The notes: a model not told the origin generated them from the letters alone. A DNA stretch of 35,109 nucleotides from Vitrella brassicaformis CCMP3155 (GCA_001179505.1 CDMY01000661.1:1-35109); one strand, 5' to 3'; counted from the first letter of the stretch, positions 1 through 24,306 are shown. Made by a program: numbers and translations.

Positions 1-1661
1 CCTGGAAGCTGCAAAGAGAGGCCGTACACACATACATGCGACCAACCGTACACCCACAACAATGTCTGTGTTTTTCTGTGTGTCTGTCGTGGCTGCCATG
101 CCTTGCGTTTGCGTCCTCTCCCTTGCGCAGCGCCAGCAGCAGCTGACCCACATCAATCGTGCCTGAACCACACAGAGGGAGACAACGCATGCCTGTGGTA
201 TGATGTCTCGTGCCCACATTCGCACCTCTGCGTTTCTCGTCTAGGACGTTGAACAAGTGGATGAGGTTCTTTTCGACCGTCTCCCTGTCAGGAGCAGCCC
301 CCTACACCCACACCCACATACCACACCCGTGATGTCCCCCCTACTTTGACAACCCTCTCGCACAGACACACTGACTGACTGACCCGTTCCTCGTCGCTCT
401 CTTCGTCTTCCTCCACGTGTCGTGACTTAAGCCGCACGCCACCCGTCAGCCCCTGCAGCTCCTCCAACTCAGCACGCTCCTGCTCGTCGGCCTTCTCCCT
501 GGCTAGCTGGTCAGCCAACTCGCGGAACCGCTGTGTGTCGAACAGCTGGCTTATGGCCGTGCACGCCACGCGGAGGAAGGAGCGGCAGTCGACTTGGCCA
601 TAGGGGTCGGGCATCAGGATCGACAACAGCACCTGTGCATGTGTGGGTGGGTGCAGGGTGAGGAGCACGCGTCTTTGTGTGTGGACTTATGGGAGATTGT
701 GTGTGTGTGCCTACGTGTATTTGGATTCTGGAGAGGCAGAGCTGTGATGCGTTGAAGAGGATGTCGCGAATTGTCCAGATCGGCAGTTTGAAGTCATAGG
801 TCACCTGAGACTGCAGGGGACGACCAGACAGGTAGAGAGACGTGCAGATGAGACACGCGAACACACAGGCAGTTTGTACGCACCTTCTTGATGAGCTGCA
901 CGAGGTGGTCTGAGGCCCCGCAGGTCCGTCTCGACCAACGCATTGTGGAACGCATCACGCCTGACGAGACAAGTGCATCCATCCATCCATCCACCGACTC
1001 CGTGTATGTTGATTGATCTGCATGGCATGGCTACCTGAGTTTCTGCAGCTGCCCGAAGATGCCACTGTACGGCATTCGTCCGTCTTCCTCCTCCTCGACC
1101 ATCTGCATCAACATCGTCACCTCCTGCGGACTGAACCTGCATAAAAAGGGAGCGGAGCTGGGTCTCTGGTGGGTGCTTTCCGTGAGGTGAGTATCTACTC
1201 ACCTGTCGCTTCTCTGTTCGATGCATTGCCTGAACTCGTGTCTCGTCAGCATTCCCGTGCCAGCACTGTCAACATTGCGAAACGACTCCTCTATTAACCT
1301 AAAGATGAACAGTCACCCACAGCATAAACACGCACTGGAGACAAGGGGTCGCTCCTTCTGCTGATCTACCTTACCTGGTGGTCTCCTCAAGCCCAAAGCA
1401 CAGTATGATGGCCTCGTCTGTGACCTCGGCCGCAGGCAGTCCGCGAGGTTCATACGCCTCGCGACGTTCCTGCAAAGCTGAGATGACCATTGGGGCCGCC
1501 TGATGGGTCGATGGATGGATGGTATGCATATGGCAGTACGTATCCTGCACGAGCTTGCTTGTCAACTTGCTTACTTCAACGAAAGGGAGGTAGTCGATGT
1601 ATCCGTCGGCGTTTTCCATGGTAGTTGTCAGCAGCAGCCGAATGTCCCAGTCGGTCAGGCC
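1..1661 (-). CDS. Multi-EF-hand protein, multi-exon, partial (3' end runs off the window; 5' end unresolved; apparent +1 frameshift near 910)
   Basis: Spliced exons give EF-hand-like loops: GLTDWDIRLLLTTTMENADGYIDYLPFVE, FRNVDSAGTGMLTRHEFRQCIE, MPDPYGQVDCRSFLR, LFNVLDEKRRGTIDVGQL; exons are flanked by GT/AG and microsatellite introns. Confidence 0.6.
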
Positions 1662-2269: not shown

Positions 2270-3571
2270 TCAGACAGGCGAGCCCCCATCGATTGAGCTG
2301 TCGGACGAGCCGGGCTGCGGTGTGGGGGGCGACGCCGCATAAACGTCCTCACTCTCGGTGGCGGGGGTGATGGCCCCCACCTTGTTATTGCCAGACTTGA
2401 GCTGGGGGGTCGCCTCACCGCTGGTGCCGTTGTCATGCAGATCGTCCTGCATGTCGACACTCAGCAAGGAGGATGCCTTGGCGGGAGGCAGGCTGTCTTC
2501 GCCACGCTGAGAGGGAGAGAAAGACACATGAGTTTTGGATGGTGGGGGTGATGTGCACTATGGGGTGGTGGTGGTGGTGGGTGTGTACCATTTCCTCTTT
2601 CTCCATCCTTCGCTCGGCCGCGTAGTCCTCTTCACTGCACACACACACACACACACGGGCACATAGCAGCGGCATCGTAGAGGCTCAGGGCATTCAATGT
2701 CGGTAGGTGGTACGTCTTGGGCAGAATGAGGTTGAGCGTGACAGTGATGAGGAAGGCCAGCACGAGTTCTGAGCTGATGATCAGGTAGGTCGCCCGCCAC
2801 AGGGTGTTGACGGTGAAGCTCAGGTCCCGCAGCTTGCACACCCTCGTGCCGTCCTCATCGATGTATCTGTCGTCCCGCACGGCGATGTCAAGAGCGTTGA
2901 TAGCCTGCAGGTAGTGGGCCGTCTCGTCGGCACCTTCGCAATTCCACGCCGCCTAAATGCATCAATGCCCACACAAACACACACATACAGATACATACAT
3001 TGGTGGAGAGGGGAGGAAGGGCCGTCTTCGTGTGTNNNNNNNNNNNNNNNNNNNNNNNNNNNNNNNNNNNNNNNNNNNNNNNNNNNNNNNNNNNNNNNNN
3101 NNNNNNNNNNNNNNNNNNNNNNNNNNNNNNNNNNNNNNNNNNNNNNNNNNNNNNNNNNNNNNNNNNNNNNNNNNNNNNNNNNNNNNNNNNNNNNNNNNNN
3201 NNNNNNNNNNNNNNNNNNNNNNNNNNNNNNNNNNNNNNNNNNNNNNNNNNNNNNNNNNNNNNNNNNNNNNNNNNNNNNNNNNNNNNNNNNNNNNNNNNNN
3301 NNNNNNNNNNNNNNNNNNNNNNNNNNNNNNNNNNNGGGGGGGGGGGGGGGGGATTACGAGTGAGTTTGGATGGACTGTTCCGGCGAATTTGATGCCTGCG
3401 CTGATGCCGATGGCACATGCAAGGATGAACATCTTCCGCTGGGTGAAGCCACCGTGAGCCACCATCGACAGACCTACACACACACACACACACAGAAACA
3501 CACACACACACGGACAAACATACAGACAGAGAGACGCGCTCCAGATGCGTTGTCCTATCCTCTTCTCTCTC

Positions 3572-3608
<37 letters not shown>

Positions 3609-5619
3609 TGTGTGTGTTGCAGGTGCTGACACTGACCTCCGATGAGCATGAGTCCGAAGCAGATGGTGAGGGCCGCGCCGATGACTGGCCAGGGGATCAG
3701 CACAAAGGCCGCACCGAACTTGCCAAACAGACCTGTGTGACGGGTGGGCGGCAGGATGGCATGGCATGTGGCCGTCTTTTGGTGTGTATGGTACCCAGGA
3801 ATACGAGCAGGAAGCCCACCACAACGCCTGCACGGCGAGAGGCTACACGCTGATGAGAGAAAGACAAGACAACAGCCAAGGCGAGAACATGACGATGGTT
3901 GAACTCATGAGAGCAGATGGGTCACCGTCATTGCAATGATGCCGTTGTTCTGAAAGGAAGAGAGACAATTGACAGGGAATGACAGACACATTTTTCGCTC
4001 CCGTGTGTGTGCCTGTCTCTGCTCGCGGCTCGCGTACCCCGCTGTAAGTGATGTTGGGAAATGCCGTGAAGATGGCGCAGAACAGACTCGAGAAGGCATC
4101 ATTCAGCAGACCACCCTGCACACAAACGGAGAAAGCAATGGCATACGGGTCGGGGCCTCTGTTGGTTGAACGACGAACCTGCAGGATGAGATTGAAGCGG
4201 TCGCCTGCAGTGGGCAGGCCGCTGTACTTGGCCGTGGCAGTGAGGTCGCCCATGCACTCTACACCAGACACGATGTAAGCGATGATCATCGGCAGCAGCA
4301 GAGACCCGTCAAACGCCACACCGTACCTGCACGAGCCAGACACGTCTTTCTCTCTCTCTCGGTTCTCCTCCTTCTCTGCTCCCTTCCTCCCTCCCTGACT
4401 CTCACTTGAACAGGTGTGGGTATGTGAACCAAGGCGCATCCGCGAGACCATTGTTGCTGATGTCCATGTTGATGAACCCGTCACACCCCCAAGTCGGCCC
4501 GTGCGCACACCGCCTCGTGCCGAAAAAGAGAGCGAAGATGGTACCGAATAGGATGCCGAAGAAGACGGCGGCTGACTTGAAGATGGGGATGGAGTACTTG
4601 GCGCGGACCCAGTAGAAGCCGACGATCATGCAGATGGTGAAAAGACCCAGACAGACCCCACTCGTTGGGCGCCCCGTAGGCGTCGAACGGTCCCACATTG
4701 CCCGCCAGGTTGTTGACGCCCACATAGAGCAGGGACAGCCCAATCATGAACACCACAGTGCCCTGCACACACGAACGGACACACAGACAGAGAGAGAGAG
4801 GATCGGCACCACATGGGTGGAGTGTGTCGTTAGCGGCTGGATTACCGTGACGAGTGGCGGGAAGATGGCCTTCATCTTGGTCGGACAAAAAGACATGAAG
4901 GCCTCGACGATCCAGCATATCATGGCCCCCACAAAGATGGCAGCCAGCCTGACGACAGACAGACAGACAACAAATGGCGCCATACATACACACAAAATGG
5001 TCCATATACGTGTGTGTGTGTACCTCTGATGCGGTGTGAGGGAGCGGTCGACGTTGGACGCTATCACAACAAACGTGAATGACGTGCCCATGACACTCAA
5101 CATCCCTGACCCCAGAGCGATTCCCTGAACAACACACACACACCCGGCCGACCACCGGGCGGGCCGGCAACGTAAAGCCATGTGCGTGCCGTGCTGTGCG
5201 TGGCAGTACCAGAGGGAAGCCGGGCAGCGGAGGTGTTCTGAACTGGTAGACGTGGATCAGCGTGCACACCCCAGACGTGAAGACGCTCATGCTCACGAGG
5301 TAAGGGATCTCATCAAAATTCTCAGTGGCAATGCCGATGAGTGTGGCGGCGGTGGGGAGTGACCCAAGCATCACGAGAGCATGCTGCAGGCCGAAGAAGC
5401 ACGCCAAGTGCCACGGGATCTTCTCGTCGGGCTTGATCAGCCGGTCTTGACCTGCAAACACCAAGCGAAAAGGCATCAGATCATTCAAAATCTTCATGTT
5501 TGGCTTCACGCATGCGCACCTCTGAACATGTTGACCCTTGCCGGCTGTGCATTCTTGACGGCCGAAGGGTGCTGCTTCAGGGGCGCCTCCGACTCAGTCA
5601 TGGCCTCACTCATGCTCAT
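2270..5619 (-). CDS. NAT/NCS2 xanthine-uric acid/uracil permease family (UapA-like) transporter, multi-exon; interrupted by a gap (3036-3335) and an apparent 4-bp-duplication frameshift at about 4649-4656
   Basis: gccaccATG at 5619; TM1 GLQHALVM (QH motif), TM3 SVMGTSF, PPLVTGTVVFMIGLSL, TM8 VECMGDLTAT, signature PNITYSGNNGIIAMTRVASR, last TM LITVTLNLILPK; stop TGA at 2270-2272. Confidence 0.9.
3036..3335. other. Assembly gap (300 N) inside the permease gene, flanked by a poly-G run
   Basis: N run seen directly; same length as the second gap, suggesting a placeholder size. Confidence 1.
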
Positions 5620-5786
5620 GGTGGCAAAGGCAACGCCCCTTGACTCCTCCCGGAGGCGCTTTGCCGGTTCAGAAGAGGTCGTAGATCTATCGCCGGAATC
5701 GGCCGGATGGTCCGACGGTGAAGATCTCGTGAAATGTCGTGAAACACATCACTCATGAGCTAGCTCGCTCCGGCAGGGGGAGCAAA
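5620..5786. promoter_or_regulatory. 167-bp bidirectional promoter/5'UTR region shared by permease and dioxygenase
   Basis: Divergent ATGs at 5619 (-) and 5787 (+); contains TCGTGAAA direct repeat (5727-5734, 5737-5744) and palindromes CTCATGAG (5752-5759) and GAGCTAGCTC (5757-5766). Confidence 0.6.
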
Positions 5787-7315
5787 ATGACGGCGAAGGT
5801 GCCTGTCATAGATCTGCTGCTTCCCGAGGAGGAGGTTGTCAAGGCCATCCGCAAAGGATGCGAGGAGGTGAGCGGAGCAAACAGGAGAGGACGCGTCTGC
5901 GCCAATCTCGTTCATCGTCTTGCTTGTCTGGCGGACACTGCAGATTGGCTTCCTCTGCATCATCAACCATGGCGTTGACCCAGCTGTCGTGGCGGGCGCC
6001 TTCAAGGCGATGCACGACTTCTTCACCCTGCCCCTTGAGACCAAGATGAAGAGCAAAGGAACACCTGCAGGGTGCGACAGGCAGCCGCAGAAACAGTCTT
6101 GGAGCCCGTCACACACTCTCTGCGCGTGTGTGTGTGTCTGATCAGCTACATGCCACTGCAAGCTCAGACGCTGGACCCTGGTACGCACAGACAGGCAGAC
6201 AGACAGACAGACAGCTGAATGCCCCCTGTCCATCTGTTTGTTCTTTGGGCAGAGAACCAGACCGAGCCAGACCAAAAAGAGGGCTATGGCATGGTTGAGG
6301 AGGTGCCCGCCGGGCACGATCCCAACGAGTTTCCCTTCCACGGCAAGCGTGTGTACCCGGACGACAGCGACGTGCCGGGCTGGCGGGAGGCCGTCATGGG
6401 TTACTATGGTGCGGTGCGGTCGCTGGCGATGCGGATGCTGCGGTACATCGCCTTGGCCATGGAGGTGCCCGACGCCGACGCATTCATAGCCAAGAACTTC
6501 GAGTGAGCGGACGCTCAGCAGCCTTGTTGGGCGTGGTCGACCGATATATGTGTCTGTTCGTGCCCATGACAGGTTCCCCATCTTCCACATGCGGATGCTT
6601 CGGTATGAACCGCGGGCGTCCAATCCGGCAGAGGGGCGACTCGCGGCGGGCGCACACACTGACTGGGGTGAGAACAGTTCAACAGATGTGACCCTCATAA
6701 TGAATGCACGGTGGGGTGTGGTCTGTGTGTCTGTGTTTCTTGTAGGGTTGATAACACTGCTCAAGACGGATGGCGGGGAAGGACTGCAGGTGCAGCCGCG
6801 CAACTCTTCTGAGTGGCTCGACGTCGAGGAGCCGGCCAATGCCTTCGTTGTCAACCTGGGAGACCTGCAGCAGGTGCGTCAGCCACGTGGCCCCAACTGA
6901 TTTTGTCATATGTGTGTGATGCCCGCGGGGCTCTGTGTTTGTCTGTCAGCGGTGGACCAATGATGTGTTCACTTCCCGGCCGCACCGAGTGATGCTCAAG
7001 TCTGACAAAGTGCGATATAGGTAAAGGCCCCTGTGCACACAGACCTGACAAAGACACACACACACACACACACATATGCGAGCTTGGCCTTCTGTGTGTG
7101 CGGCGTGGCGTTGCAGCATAGCCTACTTCTGTGATGCGGACGAGCGCGCATTGGTCGAATGTCTGCCGTCGTTCCAGTCGCCCTCCCGCCCTCCCCGGTA
7201 TTCGCCCATTACGCAAGCGGCCTACCTGGCGGCCAAGTATGAGCAGACGATCAAGAAGGAATTCAATGTCGTGAGCGCCAGTGTCGAAAGGGTGGAGGAG
7301 AGTGCCGTTGTGTGA
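5787..7315 (+). CDS. 2-oxoglutarate/Fe(II)-dependent dioxygenase, IPNS/DIOX_N + 2OG-FeII_Oxy type, 8 exons
   Basis: VPVIDL...IGFLCIINHGV N-terminus; Fe ligands AGAHTDWG (HxD) and SRPHRV (distal His); 2OG-binding RYS; VVNLGDLQQRWTND; all introns GT-AG and in phase. Confidence 0.93.
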
Positions 7316-7672
7316 TTGACTGATATGCATGATGGGTAACGCATCGCGGCCTTTTTGCCGCTGATGGCGACCTTGTATGGCAATGGTGTTCATGATGATG
7401 CACTGCGTGGTTTTTTCTTTTTCTGTTTGTTTTCCCTTAGCGGCTGTGTCGGTTCTGTCTCGTGGCCGTCTCGTGGTGATGTGTTTGCATCAATCGGAAG
7501 GGAAGCCATTCAATTGTCACATGTGGATCATGATGAGGGGAGGCTATCGATCTTTCTCTCCAGTCTGTCCAGTCGTTGGTCTATATCTATCAGACGATTC
7601 TCGAGTCGACGCGATGCTGACACATAGGCACACACACACACACACAGACATATTCCCTGTGCCAGAGTGCCA

Positions 7673-8647
7673 TTACTGTGAACACCTACTCAGTTCCATC
7701 TCTCTCATGAACCACACCAAATCGTAAGAACCTGTGCGAAGGAGAAATGTCACAACACGCGCCAAAGTGAGAGAGGATACATTTGATGCACCCCCCACCC
7801 ACATCCCCAGCCACTCGCCGCTCACCGAGGAAGAAATTGTTGTCTTGGAATATATCATCAGACTGCTCGAGAGGCCGGACATACTTGCAGCCATCCAGCG
7901 TATCGCAATCGTGCTCCAAGATGTCTTCCAGGCTGATGTACGACCAGAATGCGCTCTTGTCCGGGTCGAACTCACGCGGCGTGCGTCCCGTGGCCCCAAA
8001 ATAAAGTTCTGAATGACGAATAATCAGGACCATTCTGTCCAGGTCAACGTAGTAGAGGAAACCGTGGAGGCCCCGCCCGTAGGTTCCATCATTGACTACC
8101 CCGAGCTGCAGCACCCTTTCCAGCGACCTGTTTTCCCCTCGAAGAAGAATGGGTCATCGCCTATCTCTTCGTAGACCGTCTTCAGCTGCGCAACCTGGAC
8201 ACAAGACAAACAGCGCATCCAAGACTTGACGGGCAATGCATGACCTGATCTCACTCACTGACTGACTTGTCGCTTCCATCTTGCCAGCGAAGGGTCTTCC
8301 TTCAAAGCCGCCTTGACCTCACTTAATACCGAATCTCCGAGGCCCGAAGGATACCCATCATAGTTCTGCAGCAGACAGAAGCGCACAGGCTGCATGGACG
8401 ACACGAGAGAGGGAGGCAACCGACGGAAACCGCCTACGGTGTGAAAGCAGTACTTTCTTCCTTGATAGAGGAACCCAGCGGTGCCGGGCATCGTCATCCT
8501 CACACACGAGCGACGCCTAAAGCGGTATGGTGGCCTCACAGGACGGCTGCGGACGGCATCGAGGCCTCTGGCGGATGAGGGATGAGTCGGCAACAGTGAG
8601 AAGCCGTCAATGAGGGGAAGAAACGGCAAGAGAAGACAGATGCGCAT
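7673..8647 (-). CDS. Predicted plastid-targeted protein of unknown function (G-F-L-Y-x-G-x-K-Y...NYDGYPSGLG...YYVDLD domain); junction at 8106-8176 unresolved
   Basis: MRICLLLPFLPLIDG|FSLL signal + Arg/Ser-rich transit-like leader; exons MTMPGTAGFLYQGRKYCFHT / NYDGYPSGLG / LQLGVVNDG...GFLYYVDLDRMVLII / GSYDLVWFMREMELSRCSQ*. Confidence 0.7.
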
Positions 8648-9057
8648 CACAGACGACGGGGAAGAGGGCGATAAAGCAGCCGAAACGAGTGACTTCCAGA
8701 ACGACAGAACGAGTGACTTCTGATCGAACTCATTGCAGATGGTTCTCTTCTCTCTTGTTCCTTTCTAATCTTTGCGAACGGCATGAAGGCATTCCATCCG
8801 CTCAGAAACCGGTTCGTTCGACCCCGAGAAGTCATTTTACGTAAACCGAAAAGTGGGAACTCACTACACGCCACGGTGTCGGCTTTCGGGCGTTTCTCTG
8901 GTGTCCGAAAGTCTGGTATCGGAACACACGAATGCGCACGCCAAACCGATGCATGTGTCAGGAGATATCCCATCGGCTGCCTTCATTGCATTCACAGGCC
9001 ACAACATTGTGGGGCTCGCACCAACTAAGCAGACCCCTCTCCTCTCCCATCGTCAGC

Positions 9058-10144
9058 TCAGCTGACCATCTCTCTTTTCACCGGATACAGCGGCTCACAC
9101 CCGTTCAGCCGCCATATGTCACACACAAGCACTGTGGCCACACTCAGCCACATAGTCTGCGGCAAGAGGATCCAGCCAGCAATCGGCAAAGCAGCGAAGT
9201 ACAGGCGATTCGCGGCGATGCTGCTCGCCAGGACAAGCAAGACGACCGATGCTGCCGTCCCCCGTCTCCTGTCCACGTTCTGGATCGTGTTCCAGGTGTC
9301 ACCTGAAGACACTCAACGACAGACAACACACGCCCGTCCGAAGTGACAGGCATATGCGCTTTCATACTCACTCACCGATGGAGAGATGCAGCATCAGCGC
9401 AGCGATGGGAGGCGTCAGGAAGGCACCTGCCTGGCGCCTGCAGAAGGCATCAAGACATGAATGAGGCAGCAGCAGCAGCAGCAGCAGCCATTTCCACTCA
9501 CCATATCAATGTCGACGAAAGCGTCCGCAGCATGGCGATGGTGCCCCACACAAAGGGAAACACGATAGGTGGCGGCATCCATGAGGGCCTCGTCCCTTCA
9601 GCAATTTCTTTCCGCTCGCTCAGCGGAGTTGGCCGCTGGTTGTTCAGCACCGAGAACAGACGTGATCTCACCGCCATCAGCGCGAAGAAGGAGGCAGTGA
9701 GGGCCGTCGGGACGAAGGACGGCAGGGATGAGGGCAGGAGGGGCATCCCCCGGTCAAGGGCGGCAAGAGTCACCAGAATGCATGCCCACTGTAGTGCTGC
9801 AGGCCACATGCTGGTGCCGAAATGTGTGATCTGCTCATCTGTTGTGTGCATTGCTTACCCGTTGCGAGTAGGTACTTCGCCGTCGCACCGATATCCCATT
9901 CTTTCCTGACAACTGCCTTCGTTTGTGCGGATGGCTCACTCACCGCTGTGGAAGCAGCTCTCATCTCGCTTCCAGTCCGCCGTCCTGCACACTGAACTGC
10001 TGCTGCAAACGAGGGGATCTGATTGAGGCATCTTCTCGGCGTGAGAGGTGCGCTGGGAACGGTCTGAGGTGATGAGTGAAAGGCGAGAGACGAGGACAAA
10101 GCGGCGATCCATACACACACGAGGGTCCAGCTGCTAGGCGCCAT
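9058..10144 (-). CDS. tspO: TspO/MBR tryptophan-rich sensory protein, cyanobacterial-type long form, bipartite plastid leader, 4 exons
   Basis: RPSWMPPPIVFPFVWGTIAMLR, HLSIGDTWNTI, WLSVATVLVCDIWRLNGCEPLYP motifs; leader MAPSSWTLVCVWIAALSSSLA|FHSS. Confidence 0.88.
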
Positions 10145-10626
10145 CGTCGGTGTGTGTCTTTGGAGCGTCGTGAAACAGAGTTTAACTGCGAGCTAATCCC
10201 GCAGACCTGTTTTCAGTTTCGATATATGAAGGAGTTGGTTGCTAGGATGACACAGGAGGGCAGCTGAGAGGCTTTTTCTGCAGTCAGATTCAGCACTCGT
10301 CATTGCCCGGCGGAGAAAGCAGTTGGACCTCCCTCCGGTGAGCCAGCCGTCTGCTGCCGACCACTGGGCTGCCACGGTCGTCACATCAACACCCATAACA
10401 CATCACCTCCAAGGTGAGGGGTCGACTCGACGGCATATCGGTGATCGTCTTCTCCCAGCGTCGGCACGCAGAGAGCCTCTATACGCAGAGCAAGGCTCAC
10501 CGATAGTGTCCTGGTGTGATTGTCTGCTTCCTGCAGGTCGTTTGGTGACTGTGTCCGCCATCTATCCGTTGCTCGGACTTCTCTCCCACTTCTCTCCCGT
10601 GTGATTGTGAGTGTGAGTGAGGCGGC

Positions 10627-11565
10627 ATGGCGACCGACGGGTTTGACATCGCCGTCGACGACTTCTCGCGCATCGTCAACGCCTATGTGGCCAGAACTGT
10701 CACCGAAGACCTCGATGAGATCAAGAACCTCGGTAGCTACTACAGACACAGCCAGCCAGCCGTCCATCCATCTATCCGTGTGGTTGGCCTGCACTGCACC
10801 GCAGGTGGGCAGAAGGGCATTATGGAGAAGCTGCGGACGGACCAGCACACCGGCCTCTCGCAGAAGGCCGATGACAAGGCCGACCGGAAGGCAACTTTCG
10901 GCGTCAACAAGCTGCCAGAAGTACCACCGACGCGTACGCCGCACTCACACACGGAGAGGGATCTACTGGATGCTGAACAGAAGAATGATTGGGTCTCTCT
11001 TTTGTGTGTCCGTATGTGTGTGTGTGTGTGCAGCATTTTGGCGTTTGATAATAGCTGCGTTTGAGGATTTCACGTTGCGCATCCTGGCTGTGTGTGGCGT
11101 GGTGTCACTCATCCTCGGCGTGGCCGCCTCGGAACACCCTGAGATTGGTACGTCACACACACACACATACAGAGGGACACAGAGCCAGCCGATATTCCGA
11201 TGGATTGGTTGGTTCAGAGTGGATTGAGGGTTTTGCCATCTTCGTGGCGGTGTTTGTGGTGGTTCTGGTGACGGCATGGAACGATTGGAACAAGGAGAAG
11301 CAATTCAAGAAGCTCAACGAGATCAAGGTAGATAGACTAGACACACAACCAGCCGCACACACACCATCCTCTCTCTCTGTGTGTTTGTGTGTGTGCGTCT
11401 ACGCCAACAGGAGCAGAAGGACTGTTCGGTGATCCGCAACGAGGCCAAGCACAAGATATCCGTCTTCGACCTCGTGGTCGGCGACATCATCGCACTCGAA
11501 ACAGGCGACGAAGTGCCCGCAGTAAGTGCGCTGCTGACTCCTCGACGCGGCTGCGTCAAATCCCT

Positions 11566-11601
<36 letters not shown>

Positions 11602-14600
11602 TGTGTGTGCCACTTACAGGACTGTTTGGTGATGCGGAGCTATGACGTCAAGGTGGACGAGTCGTCGCTTACCGGCGAGACAGAGCAGATCGTCAAGGCG
11701 CCGTACGACACGTGTGTGGAGCAGATCGAGCAGAGGCAGGAGAAGCTCAACAACACCACGGGCAAGAAGCACCACGTCGTCGACAGCCCGGTGGTGCTCT
11801 CCGGCACCACACTCACACACGGCAGCGGGACCTTCCTGGTCGTCTCGGTGGGAATCAACTCACAGGTACGCAGGCAGGTCGAAAAAGAGAGCGATGGTGT
11901 CTGTATGGGCGTCTCGTCTCTGTGTGTGTGTGTAGGTGGGTCGCCTGATGCAGCTGCTACAGACGGCTCCTGAAGCGACCCCGCTCCAACGTGAGCAACA
12001 CACTCGCCGACTCACTCACAACACGGATGCCATCCCTTCGTGTGCGTGTGTGATGTGTTATGACATCAATCAGAGAAGCTCGAGAAGATCGCCCGCGACA
12101 TCGGCAAGGCCGGTCTTGCCGCAGCCCTTCTCACGCTGCTCGCGCTGTTGCTCCAGTAAGCCAAGCCAACCACACACACACACACAATGCACCCAGCCAC
12201 TAAGTCTGCGTGTATGTGATGGCAGGTACTGGATCATTTATGCGCTGGCTGAGCCTGAAGACCGCGACGATGCCTCGAGCATAGCCTCGGAGCACGTCGA
12301 CTTCTTCGTTGTGGCGGTAAGCAGCCAGCCAGCCAAGCTGATCCCATTCCCCTCACACCTGTCCTGTGTGTGACCTGTGTGGATGGATGGCCGGCCGCCC
12401 CATCCTCTGTGTGTTCTGTTCTGTGTGGTGTGCAGATCACTGTGGTGGTGGTTGCCGTGCCTGAAGGCCTGCCCTTGGCCGTCACCATCTCCCTGGCGTA
12501 CTCGATATCCAAGATGCTCGCAGACCAAAACTGGGTGGGTCGAAAGAGCCGACAGACACATCACACTGCAAAAACCGAGGAGGCAAGATAAGATACCCCT
12601 CTCTGTGGGTGTCTCAGGTGCGTCGTTTGGCCGCGTGTGAGACCATGGGCGGTGCGAATGAGGTCTGCTCCGACAAGACGGGCACCCTTACCAAGAACAG
12701 AATGACAGTGCAGGTGAGACGGACACACGCAGAGAGAGAGAGAGAGAGAGACGAGTGTCCGCACGCACGCACCGTTTCTCCTGTGTGCGTGTGTGTGTGT
12801 GTGTGTGGCCTCTCTCTCTTTGCAATAATCAGGCGTTTTGGAACGGCAGTGTGCTGAATGAGTTTGAAAACACCCAAGAGAACCGGTGTGACCTCAAAGA
12901 GCCCTACATGCAGGTCTGTGCGTGAGCATCTGTCCATCCATCCATCCCTCCATCCATCCATCCATGTGTGCGTGTGCGTGTGACACACATGTTTTCACAA
13001 TCCACAGATTCTGATGGACGGTCTGGCTGTCAATTCGACGGGCTACCTGGAGATCGACAATGTCGCCATTATGGACGGCACGGGGAGAACCAAAGAGGTC
13101 GGTCAGGCAGCTCAGGCAGCCAGCCGTTGTGTCCGCTGACGAGAGTGTGTGTGCGTGCGTGTGTGTGTGTGTGGTCAGGTGATCAACCACGTGGGCTCGC
13201 CCACCGAGTGCGCTTTGCTGCAATACATGAGGGTCAGCGGCACCACACCATACACACACGAGAAGGAGAGCAGCATACACACGAATTGTGGTGTGTGTGT
13301 GTGTCCATCCATCGGCCTCCCAGATGCTCGATTACGACTACTCCGCCATCCGCAAAGACTACGAAGACAAGGTAGGTACCATCCCTCTCCCTCCACACAC
13401 GCGCCTCACACACACACACGAGTCGATCTGTGTGTGTTCGTTCGTCTGTCCGTCTGTCCATCGACCCATCGGTTGATCAGATTGTGCACCAGGAGCAGTT
13501 CACTTCTGACCGCAAGATGATGACCACCGTCGTCCGCCTCCCCGACGGCAAGCTGCGCATCTTCACCAAAGGCGCGTCTGAGCGCGTCCTCAGGCTCTGC
13601 AGCAGCCGGATCGACCAGGCCGGCAACCTGCACAGGCTCGGCATGATGGAGATCGAGCGCATCGAGCAGGCCATCATCCAGAAGCTGGCCTCTCAGGCCC
13701 TCCGCACCATCGCCATCGCATACCGAGACATCGACGAGAACGCGTTGCCCGACTGGCGCGACCCCGACCCCAACACGGGCTTCTTCAAGATGGAGAGCGA
13801 CATGACCATTCTGGGGATCACAGGCATCCGCGACCCTGTCCGCGACGAGGTGCCTGAGGCCGTCCGGCGGTGTCAGCGGGCCGGCATCAAGGTGCGCATG
13901 GTGACGGGCGACAACATCGAGACGGCCAAGCAGATCGCCATCAAGTGCAACATCTACAGACCAGAGAACCACGGTCTCGCCATGCTCGGCAAGGAGTTCT
14001 ACGCCATGGTAACCAACCACACCCACACCAACACACGCAGGCAGCGACGCCATTCTATTCGCAAACAAACACGCGTTTCTTGGTTGGTCGGTGGGTCGAT
14101 CAGGTGGGTGGCGTGATCTGTGAGCTGTGCCGGACTGAGACGTGTGACTGTGCCCGGGAGGCCAAGACAGCAGCAGCCGAGAACAAGAAGATCCGCAATG
14201 ACGTGCTGGGCAAGCCTGACGAGTTCGCACGGATCGCCCCGAGGCTGGAGGTGCTTGCACGGTCGCAGCCCTCCGACAAATACGCCCTCGTCACAGGTGC
14301 GTTCTGCGGATGGGGGCCCTCGTGTAGACTAGATGGGTGTTTCTGTCTGCTCGTCACACAGGTTTGAAGAACTTGGGTGCTGTCGTTGCGGTGACGGGGG
14401 ACGGCACCAACGACGCCCCTGCACTCAAAAAAGCCGGTGGGCAGATAAGGACCCTCACACACACACTCACACACACACACACACACGTATGGCCTTCCGG
14501 ACTGTGTATGTGTGTGTGTGTGTGTGTGGTCAGATGTGGGATTTGCAATGGGTTTGGCTGGCAAGGAGGTTGCCAAGGCTGCCGCAGACATCGTGCTGCT

Positions 14601-15341
14601 CGATGACAACTTCGAGTCGATCGTCAAGGTAAGCGGCACGCCCCAAGAGGCACATCCATCCACGGGGGCGAGATGGTCTCTGTGTGTGTGTGTAGGCTGT
14701 CAAGTGGGGCCGAAACATCTACGACAACATCCGCCGCTTCCTGCAGTTCCAGATCACCGTCAACATCGTCGCTGTCCTCACGGCATTCGTCAATGGTACC
14801 CAATGCGCACAAACAAACCGCCAAGGCGTCTATCGTTGTGTGTGATGGTGATGATGGGTATACCCATTCATTGTGTGCAGCGATCTTCATTGCCGAGTCG
14901 CCCTTGACGGCCGTGCAGCTGCTCTGGATCAACCTGATTATGGTGTGTGGCGCCCAGTCACCTCTCGATTGCCTGTGTCCATCTGTGTGTGAATGTGTGT
15001 GCGTCAGGACTCCTTTGGGTCGTTGGCTTTGGCGACTGAGCCGCCCACTGACGCACTGCTGGAGAGGAGGCCGCACTCGCGAGACGAGTACCTCATCTCT
15101 AAGGCGAGCACTCAAGGACGGACAGAGGAGGACCAGACAGACGGCTTGCCCCGTCCGACCCCCCCAATCAATCGGTGTGTGTGTGTTGTGTGTCTGCACG
15201 GATCGACAGACCATGTGGCGGAACATCATGGGCCACGCGCTCTACCAGTTCACTGTCATCAGTGTGTTTGTCTACCTCGGTACGGCCGACCCCCCCCAGT
15301 GGATGGATGGATGGACGGCGTCATGCTCATGCACTGCGCGG

Positions 15342-15372
<31 letters not shown>

Positions 15373-16230
15373 TCTGTGTGTGGGGCGAGTACAGGCGACC
15401 AGTTCTTGCCCGAGCGGACCTACGACGGGCAGTACCCCGGCGACGGACAGTTCCCACTCGCGGAATACAATGATTTCAGTCCTTTCTCCGGTAGGGTAGG
15501 CCCCCTCCACCCACAACAACACAACGAACGCATCATGCCCTGCCCTCCATTTGTCTGTCTGTCTGTCCGTCCGTGTGTCGACGTGTGTGTGCATTGATTG
15601 CATTCATCAGAGTATGGCGACGGCGAGTCGTACGTGCGCAGCGGGCGGCACATGAAGCTCGGCTGGTCTGACGAGAAGGACTACCTCAAGAGCTGGAAGA
15701 TGGTAAGTACTTACGCCCCATCAACCAGCCAGGGGGAGGGAGAGGGAGAGGGTGATTGATTCATCGTGTGTGTTGTGTGTGTGTGTGTGTTGTGTGTGTG
15801 GTGTGTCTACTGTGCAGGAGGGCAAGATCGGTCCGAGTCGGCACTACACGATGGTCTTCAACGTGTTTGTGTGGATGCAAGTCTTCAACCTCTTGAACGC
15901 CCGCAAGATCCACAACGAGTGGAACATCTTCGACGGCATCTTCAGGCACGCACACACACACACACACACGCAGCGAGCATCTGACACACGCAGAGAGAGA
16001 GGGAGAAACACGTCGTGCATGACGCAATCGATGGGTGGTGTGGCTGGGGTGTGTTGTGTGCAGGAATCGGATGTTCGTGTACATCTGGTTCCTCATCGTG
16101 ATACTGCAGTCCGTCATGGCCCAGTTCGGGAGCTTCGTGCTCAGCGCACACAAAGACGTAAGCACGGACGGACACGTCAACAAATCACAATCACACACAC
16201 ACACACGCGCGTCAAAACCCTGATCGATGG

Positions 16231-16267
<37 letters not shown>

Positions 16268-16848
16268 TGTCTGTGGATATGGCCCACCATGGCTTGCTGC
16301 ACCATACCATCCATCAGGGTTTGACATGGGAGCAGTGGCTTATCTGCATCGCATTCGGTGCGGGCGAGCTGGTCGTCCAAGTCCTTCTGAGACTCATACC
16401 CGTCAAAATCATGCCACAAACAGGTCACCCTCACCCTCACCCTCCAACACACACATCCACTGAGGAAACAAATGGCTATCTGTCTGTACCTCTGTGCCTG
16501 TGTGTGTGTGTGTGTGTTTGTGTGTGTGCAGGTGCCCAGCAGGTCGACCCAATGGAGGCGCCGCCGTCCATCGCCCAGATGTCGAGGGGCAGGATATCCT
16601 CCGACCGCATCGCAGACCGGCTCGGCAGCGGATTTGGCTCACATGGAGAGCACAGGAGAGCTCACACCATCGTGTAAGTACCAGAAGGAGACCGACACAC
16701 CCACCACACACAGGACAGAACATCCATCTCACTGTGAGTCGTTTGATTGGTCAGGGCATCATCGTTTTCTCGTGGTGGGAGTGACAGGGCGCTGGGGGCT
16801 GCGGTCATCAACATTCCACAGCCGTCAATACCCAAGTCACGACCCTGA
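10627..16848 (+). CDS. PMCA: P2B-type (PMCA-like) Ca2+-transporting P-type ATPase, many exons; stop at 16677 if the last intron is retained, 16848 if spliced
   Basis: [27 protein letters not shown] (phospho-Asp), [69 protein letters not shown]. Confidence 0.97.
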
Positions 16849-24006: not shown

Positions 24007-24306
24007 NNNNNNNNNNNNNNNNNNNNNNNNNNNNNNNNNNNNNNNNNNNNNNNNNNNNNNNNNNNNNNNNNNNNNNNNNNNNNNNNNNNNNNNNNNNNNN
24101 NNNNNNNNNNNNNNNNNNNNNNNNNNNNNNNNNNNNNNNNNNNNNNNNNNNNNNNNNNNNNNNNNNNNNNNNNNNNNNNNNNNNNNNNNNNNNNNNNNNN
24201 NNNNNNNNNNNNNNNNNNNNNNNNNNNNNNNNNNNNNNNNNNNNNNNNNNNNNNNNNNNNNNNNNNNNNNNNNNNNNNNNNNNNNNNNNNNNNNNNNNNN
24301 NNNNNN
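24007..24306. other. Assembly gap (300 N) separating the two tandem BTB-TLDc copies
   Basis: N run seen directly. Confidence 1.

What the first reader, a model, noticed from the sequence alone, without database searches (positions are those of the whole stretch)
2270..7315. Head-to-head NAT/NCS2 permease + 2OG-Fe(II) dioxygenase: candidate nucleobase uptake-and-oxidation module in a chromerid
Seen: the two start codons are only 167 bp apart on opposite strands, implying a shared promoter. Established: NAT/NCS2 proteins import purines/pyrimidines, and the IPNS/DIOX_N subfamily includes fungal thymine 7-hydroxylase and plant 2-ODD-C23 enzymes. From recall, bacterial members are often next to nucleobase transport or deaminase genes. 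Inference: a co-regulated two-gene catabolic/salvage unit for a modified nucleobase (thymine, methylated or oxidised purine) that I do not know to be described in alveolates.
Basis: partly seen in the sequence, partly recalled or inferred. Interest (0 to 1): 0.72.

Follow-up and report, generated by a model that had tools for sequence, protein, structure and literature searches.

The report
Broken nucleobase permease beside 2OG oxygenase
Two real, expressed genes of the alga Vitrella brassicaformis, a UapA-like nucleobase permease and an Fe(II)/2-oxoglutarate oxygenase, do start 167 bp apart on opposite strands. That spacing is normal for this compact genome, the pairing is not seen in relatives, and the permease message has a broken reading frame, so a dedicated uptake-and-oxidation module is unlikely.

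Summary
The window is Vitrella brassicaformis CCMP3155 contig CDMY01000661.1. A 14-exon NAT/NCS2 permease gene (minus strand, ATG 5619, stop 2270) and an 8-exon DIOX_N/2OG-Fe(II) oxygenase gene (plus strand, 5787-7315, 328 aa) diverge from a 167-nt spacer. Both are transcribed and spliced. The assembly gap lies wholly inside a permease intron (2953-3357), because RNA contigs join its two flanks directly.

- The permease is UapA-like, but its mature mRNA has a one-base frame break in exon 5 (G-run 4656-4659), seen in two DNA and three RNA runs.
- It also has Gly where 30 of 30 relatives have the substrate-binding Gln.
- The oxygenase is intact. It belongs to a eukaryotic "HxnY-like/At1g35190-like" clade of unknown substrate, not to T7H and apparently not to 2-ODD-C23.
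- No permease lies beside five algal homologues or Vitrella's own paralogue. NCS2 lies within 10 kb in 1-3 of 80 bacterial loci.
- Bacterial sister-clade genes do often sit in operons with ABC importers and deaminase-like amidohydrolases, which keeps an N-heterocycle substrate plausible.
- The genome's median intergenic distance is 92 bp, with head-to-head pairs over-represented.

Verdict: most likely ordinary neighbours, one of them defective. Low interest.

The parts
2270..5619 (-). NAT/NCS2 (UapA-like) permease gene with 14 exons: 5520-5619, 5210-5451, 5024-5124, 4846-4948, 4406-4762, 4179-4326, 4038-4115, 3926-3949, 3795-3849, 3637-3732, 3358-3473, 2714-2952, 2589-2634, 2270-2506. The ATG is at 5619 and the stop at 2270-2272.
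   Evidence: Pfam and NCBIfam matches. Seven introns are seen as CT..AC joints in RNA contigs. The other six were placed by CT/AC sites that fit the arithmetic of RNA contig X10 record 10. The model is identical over 1659 nt to RNA contig L002. The nearest solved structure is UapA.
4655..4666 (-). Frame break in exon 5, at a run of four G (CCCC on the plus strand, 4656-4659). Frame 0 from the ATG reads to ...YGAPNEW. The homologous reading then continues in frame +1 (VCLGLFTICMIV...) to the stop at 2270. In frame 0 a stop follows at codon 276 (4481-4483).
   Evidence: The spliced length from ATG to stop is 1942 nt = 3n+1. The Pfam profile is covered at 4-147 in frame 0 and 159-384 in frame +1. 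tblastn with a Pseudomonas NCS2 protein switches frame here. There is no indel against DNA contigs X1 and X3 or RNA contigs X10 and X12. Two ORFs of 275 and 272 aa are called on RNA contigs of ERR558152 and SRR646408.
4572..4656 (-). An 85-nt stretch that the public 616-aa gene model must skip as an intron to stay in frame. It encodes the transmembrane segment that follows the break.
   Evidence: This is the only GT..AG removal of 85 nt that restores an open frame. The annotated product is 616 aa from 2270-5613. All RNA contigs keep these 85 nt.
2953..3357 (-). Permease intron 11, which holds the assembly gap 3036-3335.
   Evidence: RNA contigs of X10 and X12 join the flanks directly, with CT..AC ends. 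The frame runs on across the joint.
3926..4040 (-). NAT signature motif, split by intron 3950-4037. It reads G-N-N-G-I-I-A-M-T-R. The Gly codon at 4038-4040 stands where the family has Gln (UapA Q408).
   Evidence: Spliced model and RNA joint 3949/4038. Alignment to UapA. Gln is present in 30 of 30 relatives that carry the motif. The FQNNG seen in the raw frame is intron-encoded.
5620..5786 (.). The 167-nt divergent spacer between the two start codons. Most of it is 5' UTR of one gene or the other.
   Evidence: The permease RNA contig's 5' end is at about 5727. The oxygenase RNA contig starts at 5773-5775.
5727..5744 (+). Two direct copies of TCGTGAAA, 10 nt apart, lying between the observed 5' ends of the two transcripts. 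Possible promoter element, untested.
   Evidence: The same 8-mer occurs only twice elsewhere in the window, once in another divergent spacer at 10168. One 8-mer shared with the paralogue's spacer is what chance predicts.
5787..7315 (+). Fe(II)/2-oxoglutarate oxygenase gene with 8 exons: 5787-5867, 5944-6071, 6146-6180, 6253-6502, 6573-6667, 6746-6873, 6950-7020, 7117-7315. The product is 328 aa (P0001).
   Evidence: All introns are GT-AG and 70-96 nt long. RNA joints. P0001 is 100% identical to exon 4, 328 aa like the 8-exon model and annotated at the model's coordinates 5787-7315. RNA contigs L002 and L003 translate exactly to it. Pfam DIOX_N plus 2OG-FeII_Oxy.
6655..7015 (+). Catalytic residues of the oxygenase: H193 (6655-6657), D195 (6661-6663), H251 (6983-6985) and R261 (7013-7015), with S263 two residues further on. 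The aromatic pair W196 and F267 corresponds to T7H Tyr217 and Phe292.
   Evidence: These columns are invariant in alignment A1. Coordinates. T7H residue roles from PMC4787775, with the alignment.

Best explanation
These are two separate, ordinary nuclear genes of Vitrella brassicaformis that lie head to head because the genome is compact. They are not a dedicated uptake-and-oxidation unit. The minus-strand gene encodes a UapA-like NAT/NCS2 nucleobase permease. In the sequenced strain its fully spliced mRNA has one extra base (or two missing) in exon 5, so translation from the ATG ends after 275 codons, of which about the first 220 are permease sequence. It also has Gly at the position of the substrate-binding Gln. 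This copy is therefore probably inactive, and inactivated recently, because the remaining 458 codons are still open. The plus-strand gene encodes an intact, expressed Fe(II)/2-oxoglutarate oxygenase with a complete H-x-D...H and R-x-S site. It belongs to a eukaryotic clade (green algae and the land-plant 'HxnY-like/At1g35190-like' proteins) whose substrate is not known. The conserved aromatic pair (W196, F267) fits a flat ring substrate. Shown here: gene structures, expression, the frame break, family placement and lack of conserved linkage. Inferred: loss of permease function and absence of functional coupling.
For: Gene models and expression. Frame break in two DNA runs and three RNA runs. 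The public 616-aa model needs an 85-nt intron that no RNA contig removes. Gln replaced by Gly, against Gln in 30 of 30 relatives. UapA is the nearest solved structure (1.7e-30 and 5e-17), against SVCT1 at 9e-11 and UraA at 5e-9. Oxygenase: invariant H193, D195, H251, R261 and nearly invariant S263. The best relatives are green algae at 40-46% identity and plant hxnY-like proteins. In the tree, P0001 and the Vitrella paralogue P0013 are sisters (SH-aLRT 99) inside a eukaryotic clade (98) separate from the bacteria. No PF00860 neighbour was found for the paralogue, five algae, four marine contigs or one MAG. NCS2 lies within 10 kb in 1 clear and 2 weak of 80 bacterial loci. The median intergenic distance is 92 bp, and head-to-head pairs are over-represented and only modestly co-expressed (PMC4501334). 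Three of four head-to-head pairs in the two Vitrella loci seen here are 173-244 bp apart.
Against: A nucleobase permease beside a member of an oxygenase family that includes thymine-7-hydroxylase and the pyridine-pathway protein HxnY is a suggestive pair. Bacterial sister-clade genes sit in importer plus amidohydrolase operons in about half of 80 loci. One Pseudomonas locus has an NCS2 permease and a RutR-like regulator within 4 kb. In Aspergillus, hxnY is co-regulated with two transporters (PMC5746545). Co-expression in Vitrella was not tested. The 458 codons left open after the break show either very recent damage or continued use. All DNA and RNA come from one culture strain, so the break may be a culture artefact. 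Chromera velia, the closest sequenced relative, could not be examined.
Confidence: 0.6

Rival explanations
1. One reading: the pair is, or recently was, a co-regulated unit. The permease imports a purine, pyrimidine or other N-heterocycle and the oxygenase hydroxylates it. One bidirectional promoter drives both, making it a eukaryotic counterpart of bacterial importer-plus-oxygenase operons.
For: The spacer is 167 nt and the observed transcript ends are about 47 nt apart. Bacterial relatives abut ABC importers (26 of 80), PRK12393 amidohydrolases (12), Bmp/PnrA (7) or NMT1 (9) binding proteins and formamidase (5). Locus L041 has an NCS2 permease plus a RutR-like TetR near the oxygenase. The aromatic sandwich of T7H is conserved. 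hxnY is co-induced with transporters.
Against: The linkage is absent in all six eukaryotic relatives examined, including the sister paralogue. NCS2 is rare next to bacterial homologues. The bacterial operon genes form a separate clade at 33-39% identity. T7H's polar contacts are not conserved. The permease frame is broken and its key Gln is lost. In the RNA contigs the oxygenase contig is 4-7 times deeper than the permease contig, which is weak evidence only. Close head-to-head spacing is the genomic norm.
Confidence: 0.15
2. The permease is functional after all. Either the frame break is a mutation fixed in the CCMP3155 culture while wild cells carry an intact gene, or ribosomes shift +1 at the break. 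The Gly variant marks a changed substrate range rather than decay. This says nothing about coupling to the oxygenase.
For: 458 codons remain open in frame +1 after the break, while the unused frame has 15 stops in 646 codons. All 13 introns are still spliced correctly and the mRNA is present in three RNA runs. Other key residues are kept: the QH motif in TM1, E-x-x-G-D in TM8, and N, G, T, R of the signature.
Against: Every DNA and RNA data set laid shows the same sequence. No stop codon or known slippery motif lies at the break, so programmed shifting has no support in the sequence. No intact variant was found in JGI metagenome contigs, but that exact-pattern scan also found no copy of the known sequence, so it only shows the locus is not in that collection.
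Confidence: 0.15
3. The oxygenase acts on an amino-acid or guanidino compound, as EFE and the plant 2-ODD-C23 homoarginine-6-hydroxylases do, and so is unrelated to the permease's cargo.
For: The best PDB match is 9OVH, a reconstructed ancestor of EFE-like bacterial IPNS-family proteins, followed by PaIPNS 6JYV. The sister paralogue P0013 lies head to head with argininosuccinate synthase, 222 bp away. 2-ODD-C23 enzymes occur in plants and green algae.
Against: The functions of 9OVH and PaIPNS are unknown. The closest soybean proteins are LOC102661081 and GLYMA_01G008400, not the tested C23 gene LOC100789278. True EFE (9scf) is a weak match, at 8e-11. No C23 sequence was available to place in the tree.
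Confidence: 0.1

Closest known systems
UapA, the uric acid-xanthine permease of Aspergillus nidulans (PDB 5I6C and later entries), and bacterial XanP/XanQ-type NCS2 permeases
   Same: Full-length Xan_ur_permease homology. UapA is by far the best solved match. Bacterial xanthine permeases are 38-44% identical over the C-terminal half. The QH motif, the E-x-x-G-D motif and N-N-G....T-R of the NAT signature are conserved.
   Different: Gly stands where UapA has Q408, which is Gln in 30 of 30 relatives. There is a one-base frame break in exon 5. A long loop lies before the last helix, and the C-terminal tail is acidic and Ser/Pro-rich. Transport was not tested.
Eukaryotic 'HxnY-like / At1g35190-like' 2-oxoglutarate oxygenases of green algae and land plants (NCBI names them after Aspergillus HxnY)
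   Same: These are the best full-length matches, at 36-46% identity and E down to 1e-72. They share a clade with P0001 in the tree (support 98) and have the same domain pair and catalytic residues.
   Different: No member of this clade that I could find has a known substrate. HxnY itself has no assigned reaction (PMC9304392). P0001 and P0013 form a long separate branch. None of the algal genes has a permease neighbour.
[quoted passage not shown]
   Same: Same fold family. The metal and 2OG ligands are conserved, as are the Arg190 equivalent (R172) and the aromatic pair Phe292/Tyr217 (F267/W196).
   Different: T7H scores only E = 3e-30, no better than TropC, TraH or H6H. The conserved residues are family-wide, not T7H-specific. 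Asn87 and Glu122, which hold the uracil ring, are Pro and Gly here, and Asn294 is Asp.
Plant 2-ODD-C23 homoarginine-6-hydroxylases (At3g50210, DIN11, rice ODD33) and bacterial EFE
   Same: Same superfamily. All are EFE-like in the broad sense, and C23 enzymes occur in plants and green algae.
   Different: These enzymes act on homoarginine or arginine and release guanidine. They are not nucleobase enzymes. The soybean proteins closest to P0001 are other loci than the tested C23 gene.
Bacterial IPNS-family oxygenases such as PaIPNS (PDB 6JYV), in operons with ABC importers and PRK12393 amidohydrolases
   Same: 33-39% identity over the full length. They follow the transporter-next-to-oxygenase theme.
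   Different: They form a separate clade. The transporters are ABC systems, not NCS2, except in one locus. Their function is unknown.

Membership tests
NAT/NCS2 nucleobase-ascorbate transporters (Pfam PF00860, TIGR00801) | Sequence match to the family profile over its whole length | tested here: met
   Profile positions 4-147 (frame 0) and 159-384 (frame +1) of 389 are covered, with E = 3e-18 and 3.4e-39. TIGR00801 also matches.
NAT/NCS2 nucleobase-ascorbate transporters (Pfam PF00860, TIGR00801) | One uninterrupted reading frame encoding all 14 transmembrane segments | tested here: not met
   The spliced mRNA from ATG to stop is 1942 nt = 3n+1, with a frame change at 4655-4666. The same sequence is present in the DNA and RNA contigs.
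NAT/NCS2 nucleobase-ascorbate transporters (Pfam PF00860, TIGR00801) | NAT signature motif [Q/E/P]-N-x-G-x-x-x-x-T-[R/K/G] (motif as I recall it from the UapA literature) | tested here: not met
   It reads G-N-N-G-I-I-A-M-T-R. The first position is Gly and the other positions are kept. Gln is present in 30 of 30 relatives.
UapA/XanQ-type xanthine-uric acid permeases | Closest similarity to characterised xanthine/uric acid permeases rather than to uracil or ascorbate carriers | tested here: met
   UapA scores 1.7e-30 and 5e-17, against SVCT1 at 9e-11 and UraA at 5e-9. The nearest bacterial hits are named xanthine or uracil-xanthine permease.
UapA/XanQ-type xanthine-uric acid permeases | Transport of xanthine or uric acid | not testable with these tools
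   This needs uptake assays in a transporter-null host.
Fe(II)/2-oxoglutarate oxygenases of the DIOX_N + 2OG-FeII_Oxy (IPNS-like) type | Both Pfam domains, the H-x-D...H iron ligands and the R-x-S 2OG ligands | tested here: met
   PF14226 and PF03171 match. H193, D195, H251 and R261 are invariant and S263 nearly invariant in A1.
Thymine-7-hydroxylase (T7H) | Specific relatedness to T7H | tested here: not met
   E = 3e-30, equal to TropC and TraH and behind PaIPNS-like proteins. The closest proteins overall are algal and plant.
Thymine-7-hydroxylase (T7H) | Substrate-contact residues Phe292, Tyr217, Arg190, Asn87, Glu122, Asn294 (PMC4787775) | tested here: inconclusive
   F267, W196 and R172 are kept, but they are invariant or nearly so across the whole family. 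Asn87 is Pro, Glu122 is Gly and Asn294 is Asp. The pairwise alignment is unreliable around Arg190, so the family alignment A1 was used there.
Plant/algal 2-ODD-C23 homoarginine-6-hydroxylases | Orthology to At3g50210, rice ODD33 or soybean LOC100789278 | tested here: inconclusive
   The nearest soybean proteins are LOC102661081 and GLYMA_01G008400, not LOC100789278. No C23 sequence was available for the tree.
Co-regulated metabolic gene pair or cluster (as in the Aspergillus hxn cluster or bacterial operons) | Linkage conserved in relatives | tested here: not met
   No PF00860 gene within 8-10 kb of five algal homologues, the Vitrella paralogue, four marine contigs and one MAG. NCS2 is nearby in 1 clear and 2 weak of 80 bacterial loci. 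Chromera was not examined.
Co-regulated metabolic gene pair or cluster (as in the Aspergillus hxn cluster or bacterial operons) | Specific co-expression of the partners | not testable with these tools
   Only assembled contigs of four runs could be laid, and these cannot give expression levels across conditions.

The most novel reading that the evidence does not exclude
The pair is a eukaryotic counterpart of the bacterial 'importer + IPNS-family oxygenase + amidohydrolase' operons: an alveolate N-heterocycle (purine-, pyrimidine- or pyridine-like) uptake-and-hydroxylation unit run from one bidirectional promoter of under 170 bp. The permease's Gly-for-Gln change would mark a new substrate range, and the frame break would be a recent accident of the culture strain.
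Probability: 0.1. Interest if true: 0.55.

Novelty: new member of a known kind. Interest (0 to 1): 0.2.

Why it matters
If the module were real, it would be a rare case of operon-like pairing of transport and catabolism in an alveolate. It would also give a first substrate lead for a large uncharacterised oxygenase clade shared by algae and plants. As it stands, the value is practical. The public 616-aa permease model rests on an intron that no transcript removes, so it should be flagged as frame-shifted. The gap in the scaffold does not touch coding sequence. The bacterial operons found along the way are a better route to the substrate of this oxygenase family than the Vitrella locus is.

Tried and rejected
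- Word search with permease exon 2 inside a 370-aa stop-free frame found nothing.
- Single exons against PDB or Pfam were too short to pass the filters, and one was sent in the wrong frame.
- tblastn of single exons against plasmids gave no hit for the permease and two weak rhizobial hits for the oxygenase.
- A look-up of earlier notes at this place was empty.
- An exact-pattern scan of JGI metagenome contigs for the break region with a variable G-run found no match. Environmental alleles therefore remain untested.
- A shared promoter motif between this spacer and the paralogue's spacer was rejected: one shared 8-mer is what chance predicts.
- A real 85-nt intron at the break was rejected. Three RNA runs keep it, it encodes a conserved helix, and removing it would leave 13 helices.
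- The 'FQNNG' reading of the NAT motif was rejected, because the F and Q are intron-encoded.
- NCBIfam gave no name for the oxygenase.
- I joined exons only inside local scripts, for frame bookkeeping and one local tblastn. Searches used exon references or stored ids (P0001, ORFs of L002).

Full report
WHAT IS THERE

The window is the whole of contig CDMY01000661.1 of Vitrella brassicaformis CCMP3155. G+C is about 57% and introns are 60-100 nt long.

Oxygenase gene (plus strand). I read an 8-exon gene at 5787-7315, with all introns GT-AG and a 328-aa product.
- Exon 2 matches Pfam DIOX_N and exons 5-6 match 2OG-FeII_Oxy.
- A search with exon 4 alone returned P0001, 328 aa and 100% identical over that exon. 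The public annotation places P0001 at 5787-7315, the coordinates of my model.
- RNA-derived contigs from ERR558152 and from a JGI transcriptome translate exactly to it, so all seven introns are confirmed.

Permease gene (minus strand). Pieces of the Xan_ur_permease profile lie in order along 5593..3621, and TIGR00801 and pbuX also match.
- Seven introns appear as CT..AC joints in spliced contigs of runs X10 and X12.
- I placed the other six by splice-site search and by the arithmetic of one 1767-nt RNA contig.
- The resulting 14-exon model is identical over 1659 nt to RNA contig L002.

THE GAP

X10 and X12 join 2951/2952 directly to 3357/3358. The gap 3036-3335 therefore lies inside intron 2953-3357, and the reading frame runs on across the joint.

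THE SPACER

The start codons are at 5619 (minus) and 5787 (plus), with 167 nt between them.
- The permease RNA contig has a 108-nt 5' UTR that reaches about 5727.
- The oxygenase contigs start at 5773-5775.
- One contig from an RNA run covers the whole spacer.

A NEW POINT: THE PERMEASE FRAME IS BROKEN

From ATG to stop the spliced mRNA is 1942 nt, which is 3n+1.
- Frame 0 carries the homology up to ...YGAPNEW. Frame +1 carries it from VCLGLFTICMIV... to the stop.
- Pfam covers profile positions 4-147 in frame 0 and 159-384 in frame +1.
- A Pseudomonas NCS2 protein aligned by tblastn changes frame at the same place.
- Bacterial relatives read ...FGSPRNLALGFF... straight through this point.
- The break sits at a run of four G (4656-4659).
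- DNA contigs of two studies (X1, X3) and RNA contigs of three runs (X10 = SRR646408, X12, ERR558152) show the same sequence with no indel. Gene callers split the mRNA into ORFs of 275 and 272 aa.
- The public 616-aa model can only arise by skipping 85 nt (4572-4656) as an intron. That stretch encodes the next helix and is kept in every RNA contig.
- After the break, 458 codons stay open, while the unused frame has 15 stops in 646 codons. The damage is therefore recent, or the frame is still read in some way.

WHAT KIND OF PERMEASE

UapA is by far the nearest solved structure, at 1.7e-30 and 5e-17, against 9e-11 for SVCT1 and 5e-9 for UraA. Bacterial xanthine permeases are 38-44% identical.
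- The QH motif, E-x-x-G-D and N-N-G....T-R are kept.
- The residue aligned with UapA Q408 is Gly (GGG at 4038-4040, the last codon of exon 7). All 30 relatives that carry the motif have Gln.
- From my own knowledge of the UapA literature, Q408 contacts the substrate. I did not check that in a paper here.

WHAT KIND OF OXYGENASE

H193, D195, H251 and R261 are invariant and S263 nearly invariant in a 16-sequence alignment.
- The best full-length relatives are green algae (Myrmecia 46%; Chlamydomonas, Coccomyxa, Bryopsis, Mesostigma) and land-plant proteins that NCBI names 'hxnY-like'. Bacterial 'isopenicillin N synthase family' proteins follow at 33-39%.
- In a 59-row tree, P0001 is sister to a second Vitrella protein, P0013 (support 99). 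Both lie in a eukaryotic clade (98) apart from the bacteria. A Hibiscus protein labelled 'like AT1G35190' nests among the plant sequences.
- Against PDB the order is 9OVH (2e-39), 6JYV (6e-31), T7H (3e-30), TropC, TraH, H6H.
- 9OVH is a reconstructed ancestor close to PaIPNS (6JYV), whose function is unknown.
- HxnY has no assigned reaction either.
The soybean proteins nearest to P0001 are different loci from the tested C23 gene.
- Of T7H's substrate contacts, the aromatic pair and Arg190 are kept, but they are kept across the whole family. Asn87 and Glu122 are Pro and Gly here.
The substrate stays open. A flat ring compound is plausible, and thymine in particular has no support.

IS THE PAIRING MEANINGFUL?

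Evidence against:
- Vitrella's median intergenic distance is 92 bp. Close neighbours are head to head more often than chance, and such pairs are in general only modestly co-expressed.
- In the two Vitrella loci I saw, three of four head-to-head pairs are 173-244 bp apart.
- The sister paralogue P0013 faces argininosuccinate synthase, not a permease.
- No PF00860 gene lies within 8 kb of homologues in Myrmecia, Coccomyxa, Bryopsis, Chlamydomonas eustigma or Symbiochloris, nor on four marine contigs or a Burkholderiales MAG.
- Among 80 bacterial loci with 10-kb flanks, tblastn with the Vitrella permease found one clear NCS2 gene (Pseudomonas kuykendallii, beside a RutR-like regulator) and two weak ones.

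Evidence for:
- 41 of the 80 bacterial loci carry one or more recurrent partners, usually abutting on the same strand: ABC ATPase (26), permease subunits (14 and 8), PRK12393 amidohydrolase related to 8-oxoguanine deaminase (12), NMT1-type (9) or Bmp/PnrA-type (7) binding proteins, formamidase (5), amidase (5).
- That clade is separate from the Vitrella protein's clade, and its importers are not NCS2.

Co-expression could not be tested. The laid runs are contigs, in which the oxygenase contig is 4-7 times deeper than the permease contig. The tool itself warns that this is a poor measure.

VERDICT

Most likely (about 0.6) these are ordinary neighbours in a compact genome, and the permease copy is defective in the sequenced strain. 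A true uptake-oxidation unit keeps about 0.15.

LIMITS

- All sequence comes from one strain.
- No C23, HxnY or T7H sequences were available to put in the tree.
- The joined, frame-corrected permease protein was not searched in the public databases (see referred steps).

Noticed in passing
L004:7446-11895 (Vitrella contig CDMY01000347.1): P0013, the sister paralogue of the oxygenase (378 aa, with an N-terminal extension of about 50 aa), lies head to head with argininosuccinate synthase, 222 bp away. Relatives of this superfamily (EFE, 2-ODD-C23) hydroxylate arginine or homoarginine, so this could be a lead or a coincidence.
   Followed up: partly
L016-L095, e.g. L069:9900-15500, L019, L059, L036: Bacterial IPNS-family oxygenases (function unknown, PaIPNS-like) recur in same-strand clusters. 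Partners are a PRK12393 amidohydrolase (8-oxoguanine-deaminase-like), a Bmp/PnrA- or NMT1-type ABC importer, formamidase and amidase. This looks like an uncharacterised catabolic operon for an N-rich compound.
   Followed up: partly
L041:4721-11687 (Pseudomonas kuykendallii): This is the one bacterial locus where the oxygenase is near an NCS2 permease. The permease is 40% identical to the Vitrella one over the C-terminal half. A RutR/YcdC-like TetR regulator, a LysR regulator and an alpha/beta hydrolase lie in the same locus.
   Followed up: partly
window 2270-5613 (public annotation): The deposited 616-aa permease product depends on an 85-nt intron (4572-4656) that no RNA contig removes. It also starts at the second in-frame ATG (5613). 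The protein was not returned by the word search, although exon 2 was the query.
   Followed up: yes
runs X11, X13, X15-X18: Marine sediment metagenomes of 2023 and 2025 hold from a twentieth to half of the sampled 31-mers of this stretch. This suggests Vitrella or a near-identical organism in sediments.
   Followed up: no
window 4636-4983 and 2548-2721: Depth in DNA contigs rises 3- to 5-fold, with many loose ends and odd joints (4474>4949, 4800>5082). These lie at (GACA)n and (CA)n tracts in introns, so they are dispersed microsatellite-like repeats, not copies of the gene.
   Followed up: partly
window 5727-5744 and 10168: TCGTGAAA occurs twice, 10 nt apart, between the two transcripts' 5' ends, and once more in the next divergent spacer (TspO gene / P-type ATPase gene).
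   Followed up: partly
window 104-1619, 7528-9809, 10627-16848, 24007-24306: The neighbours are an EF-hand protein (minus), a TspO/MBR protein (minus, tail to tail with the oxygenase, 212 bp) and a P-type cation ATPase (plus). None is a purine or pyrimidine catabolic gene. A second assembly gap lies at 24007-24306.
   Followed up: partly
L098:4497-14051 (Bryopsis sp.): Three tandem copies of the oxygenase homologue lie in a row.
   Followed up: no
If so, Vitrella has other permease genes of this kind.
   Followed up: no
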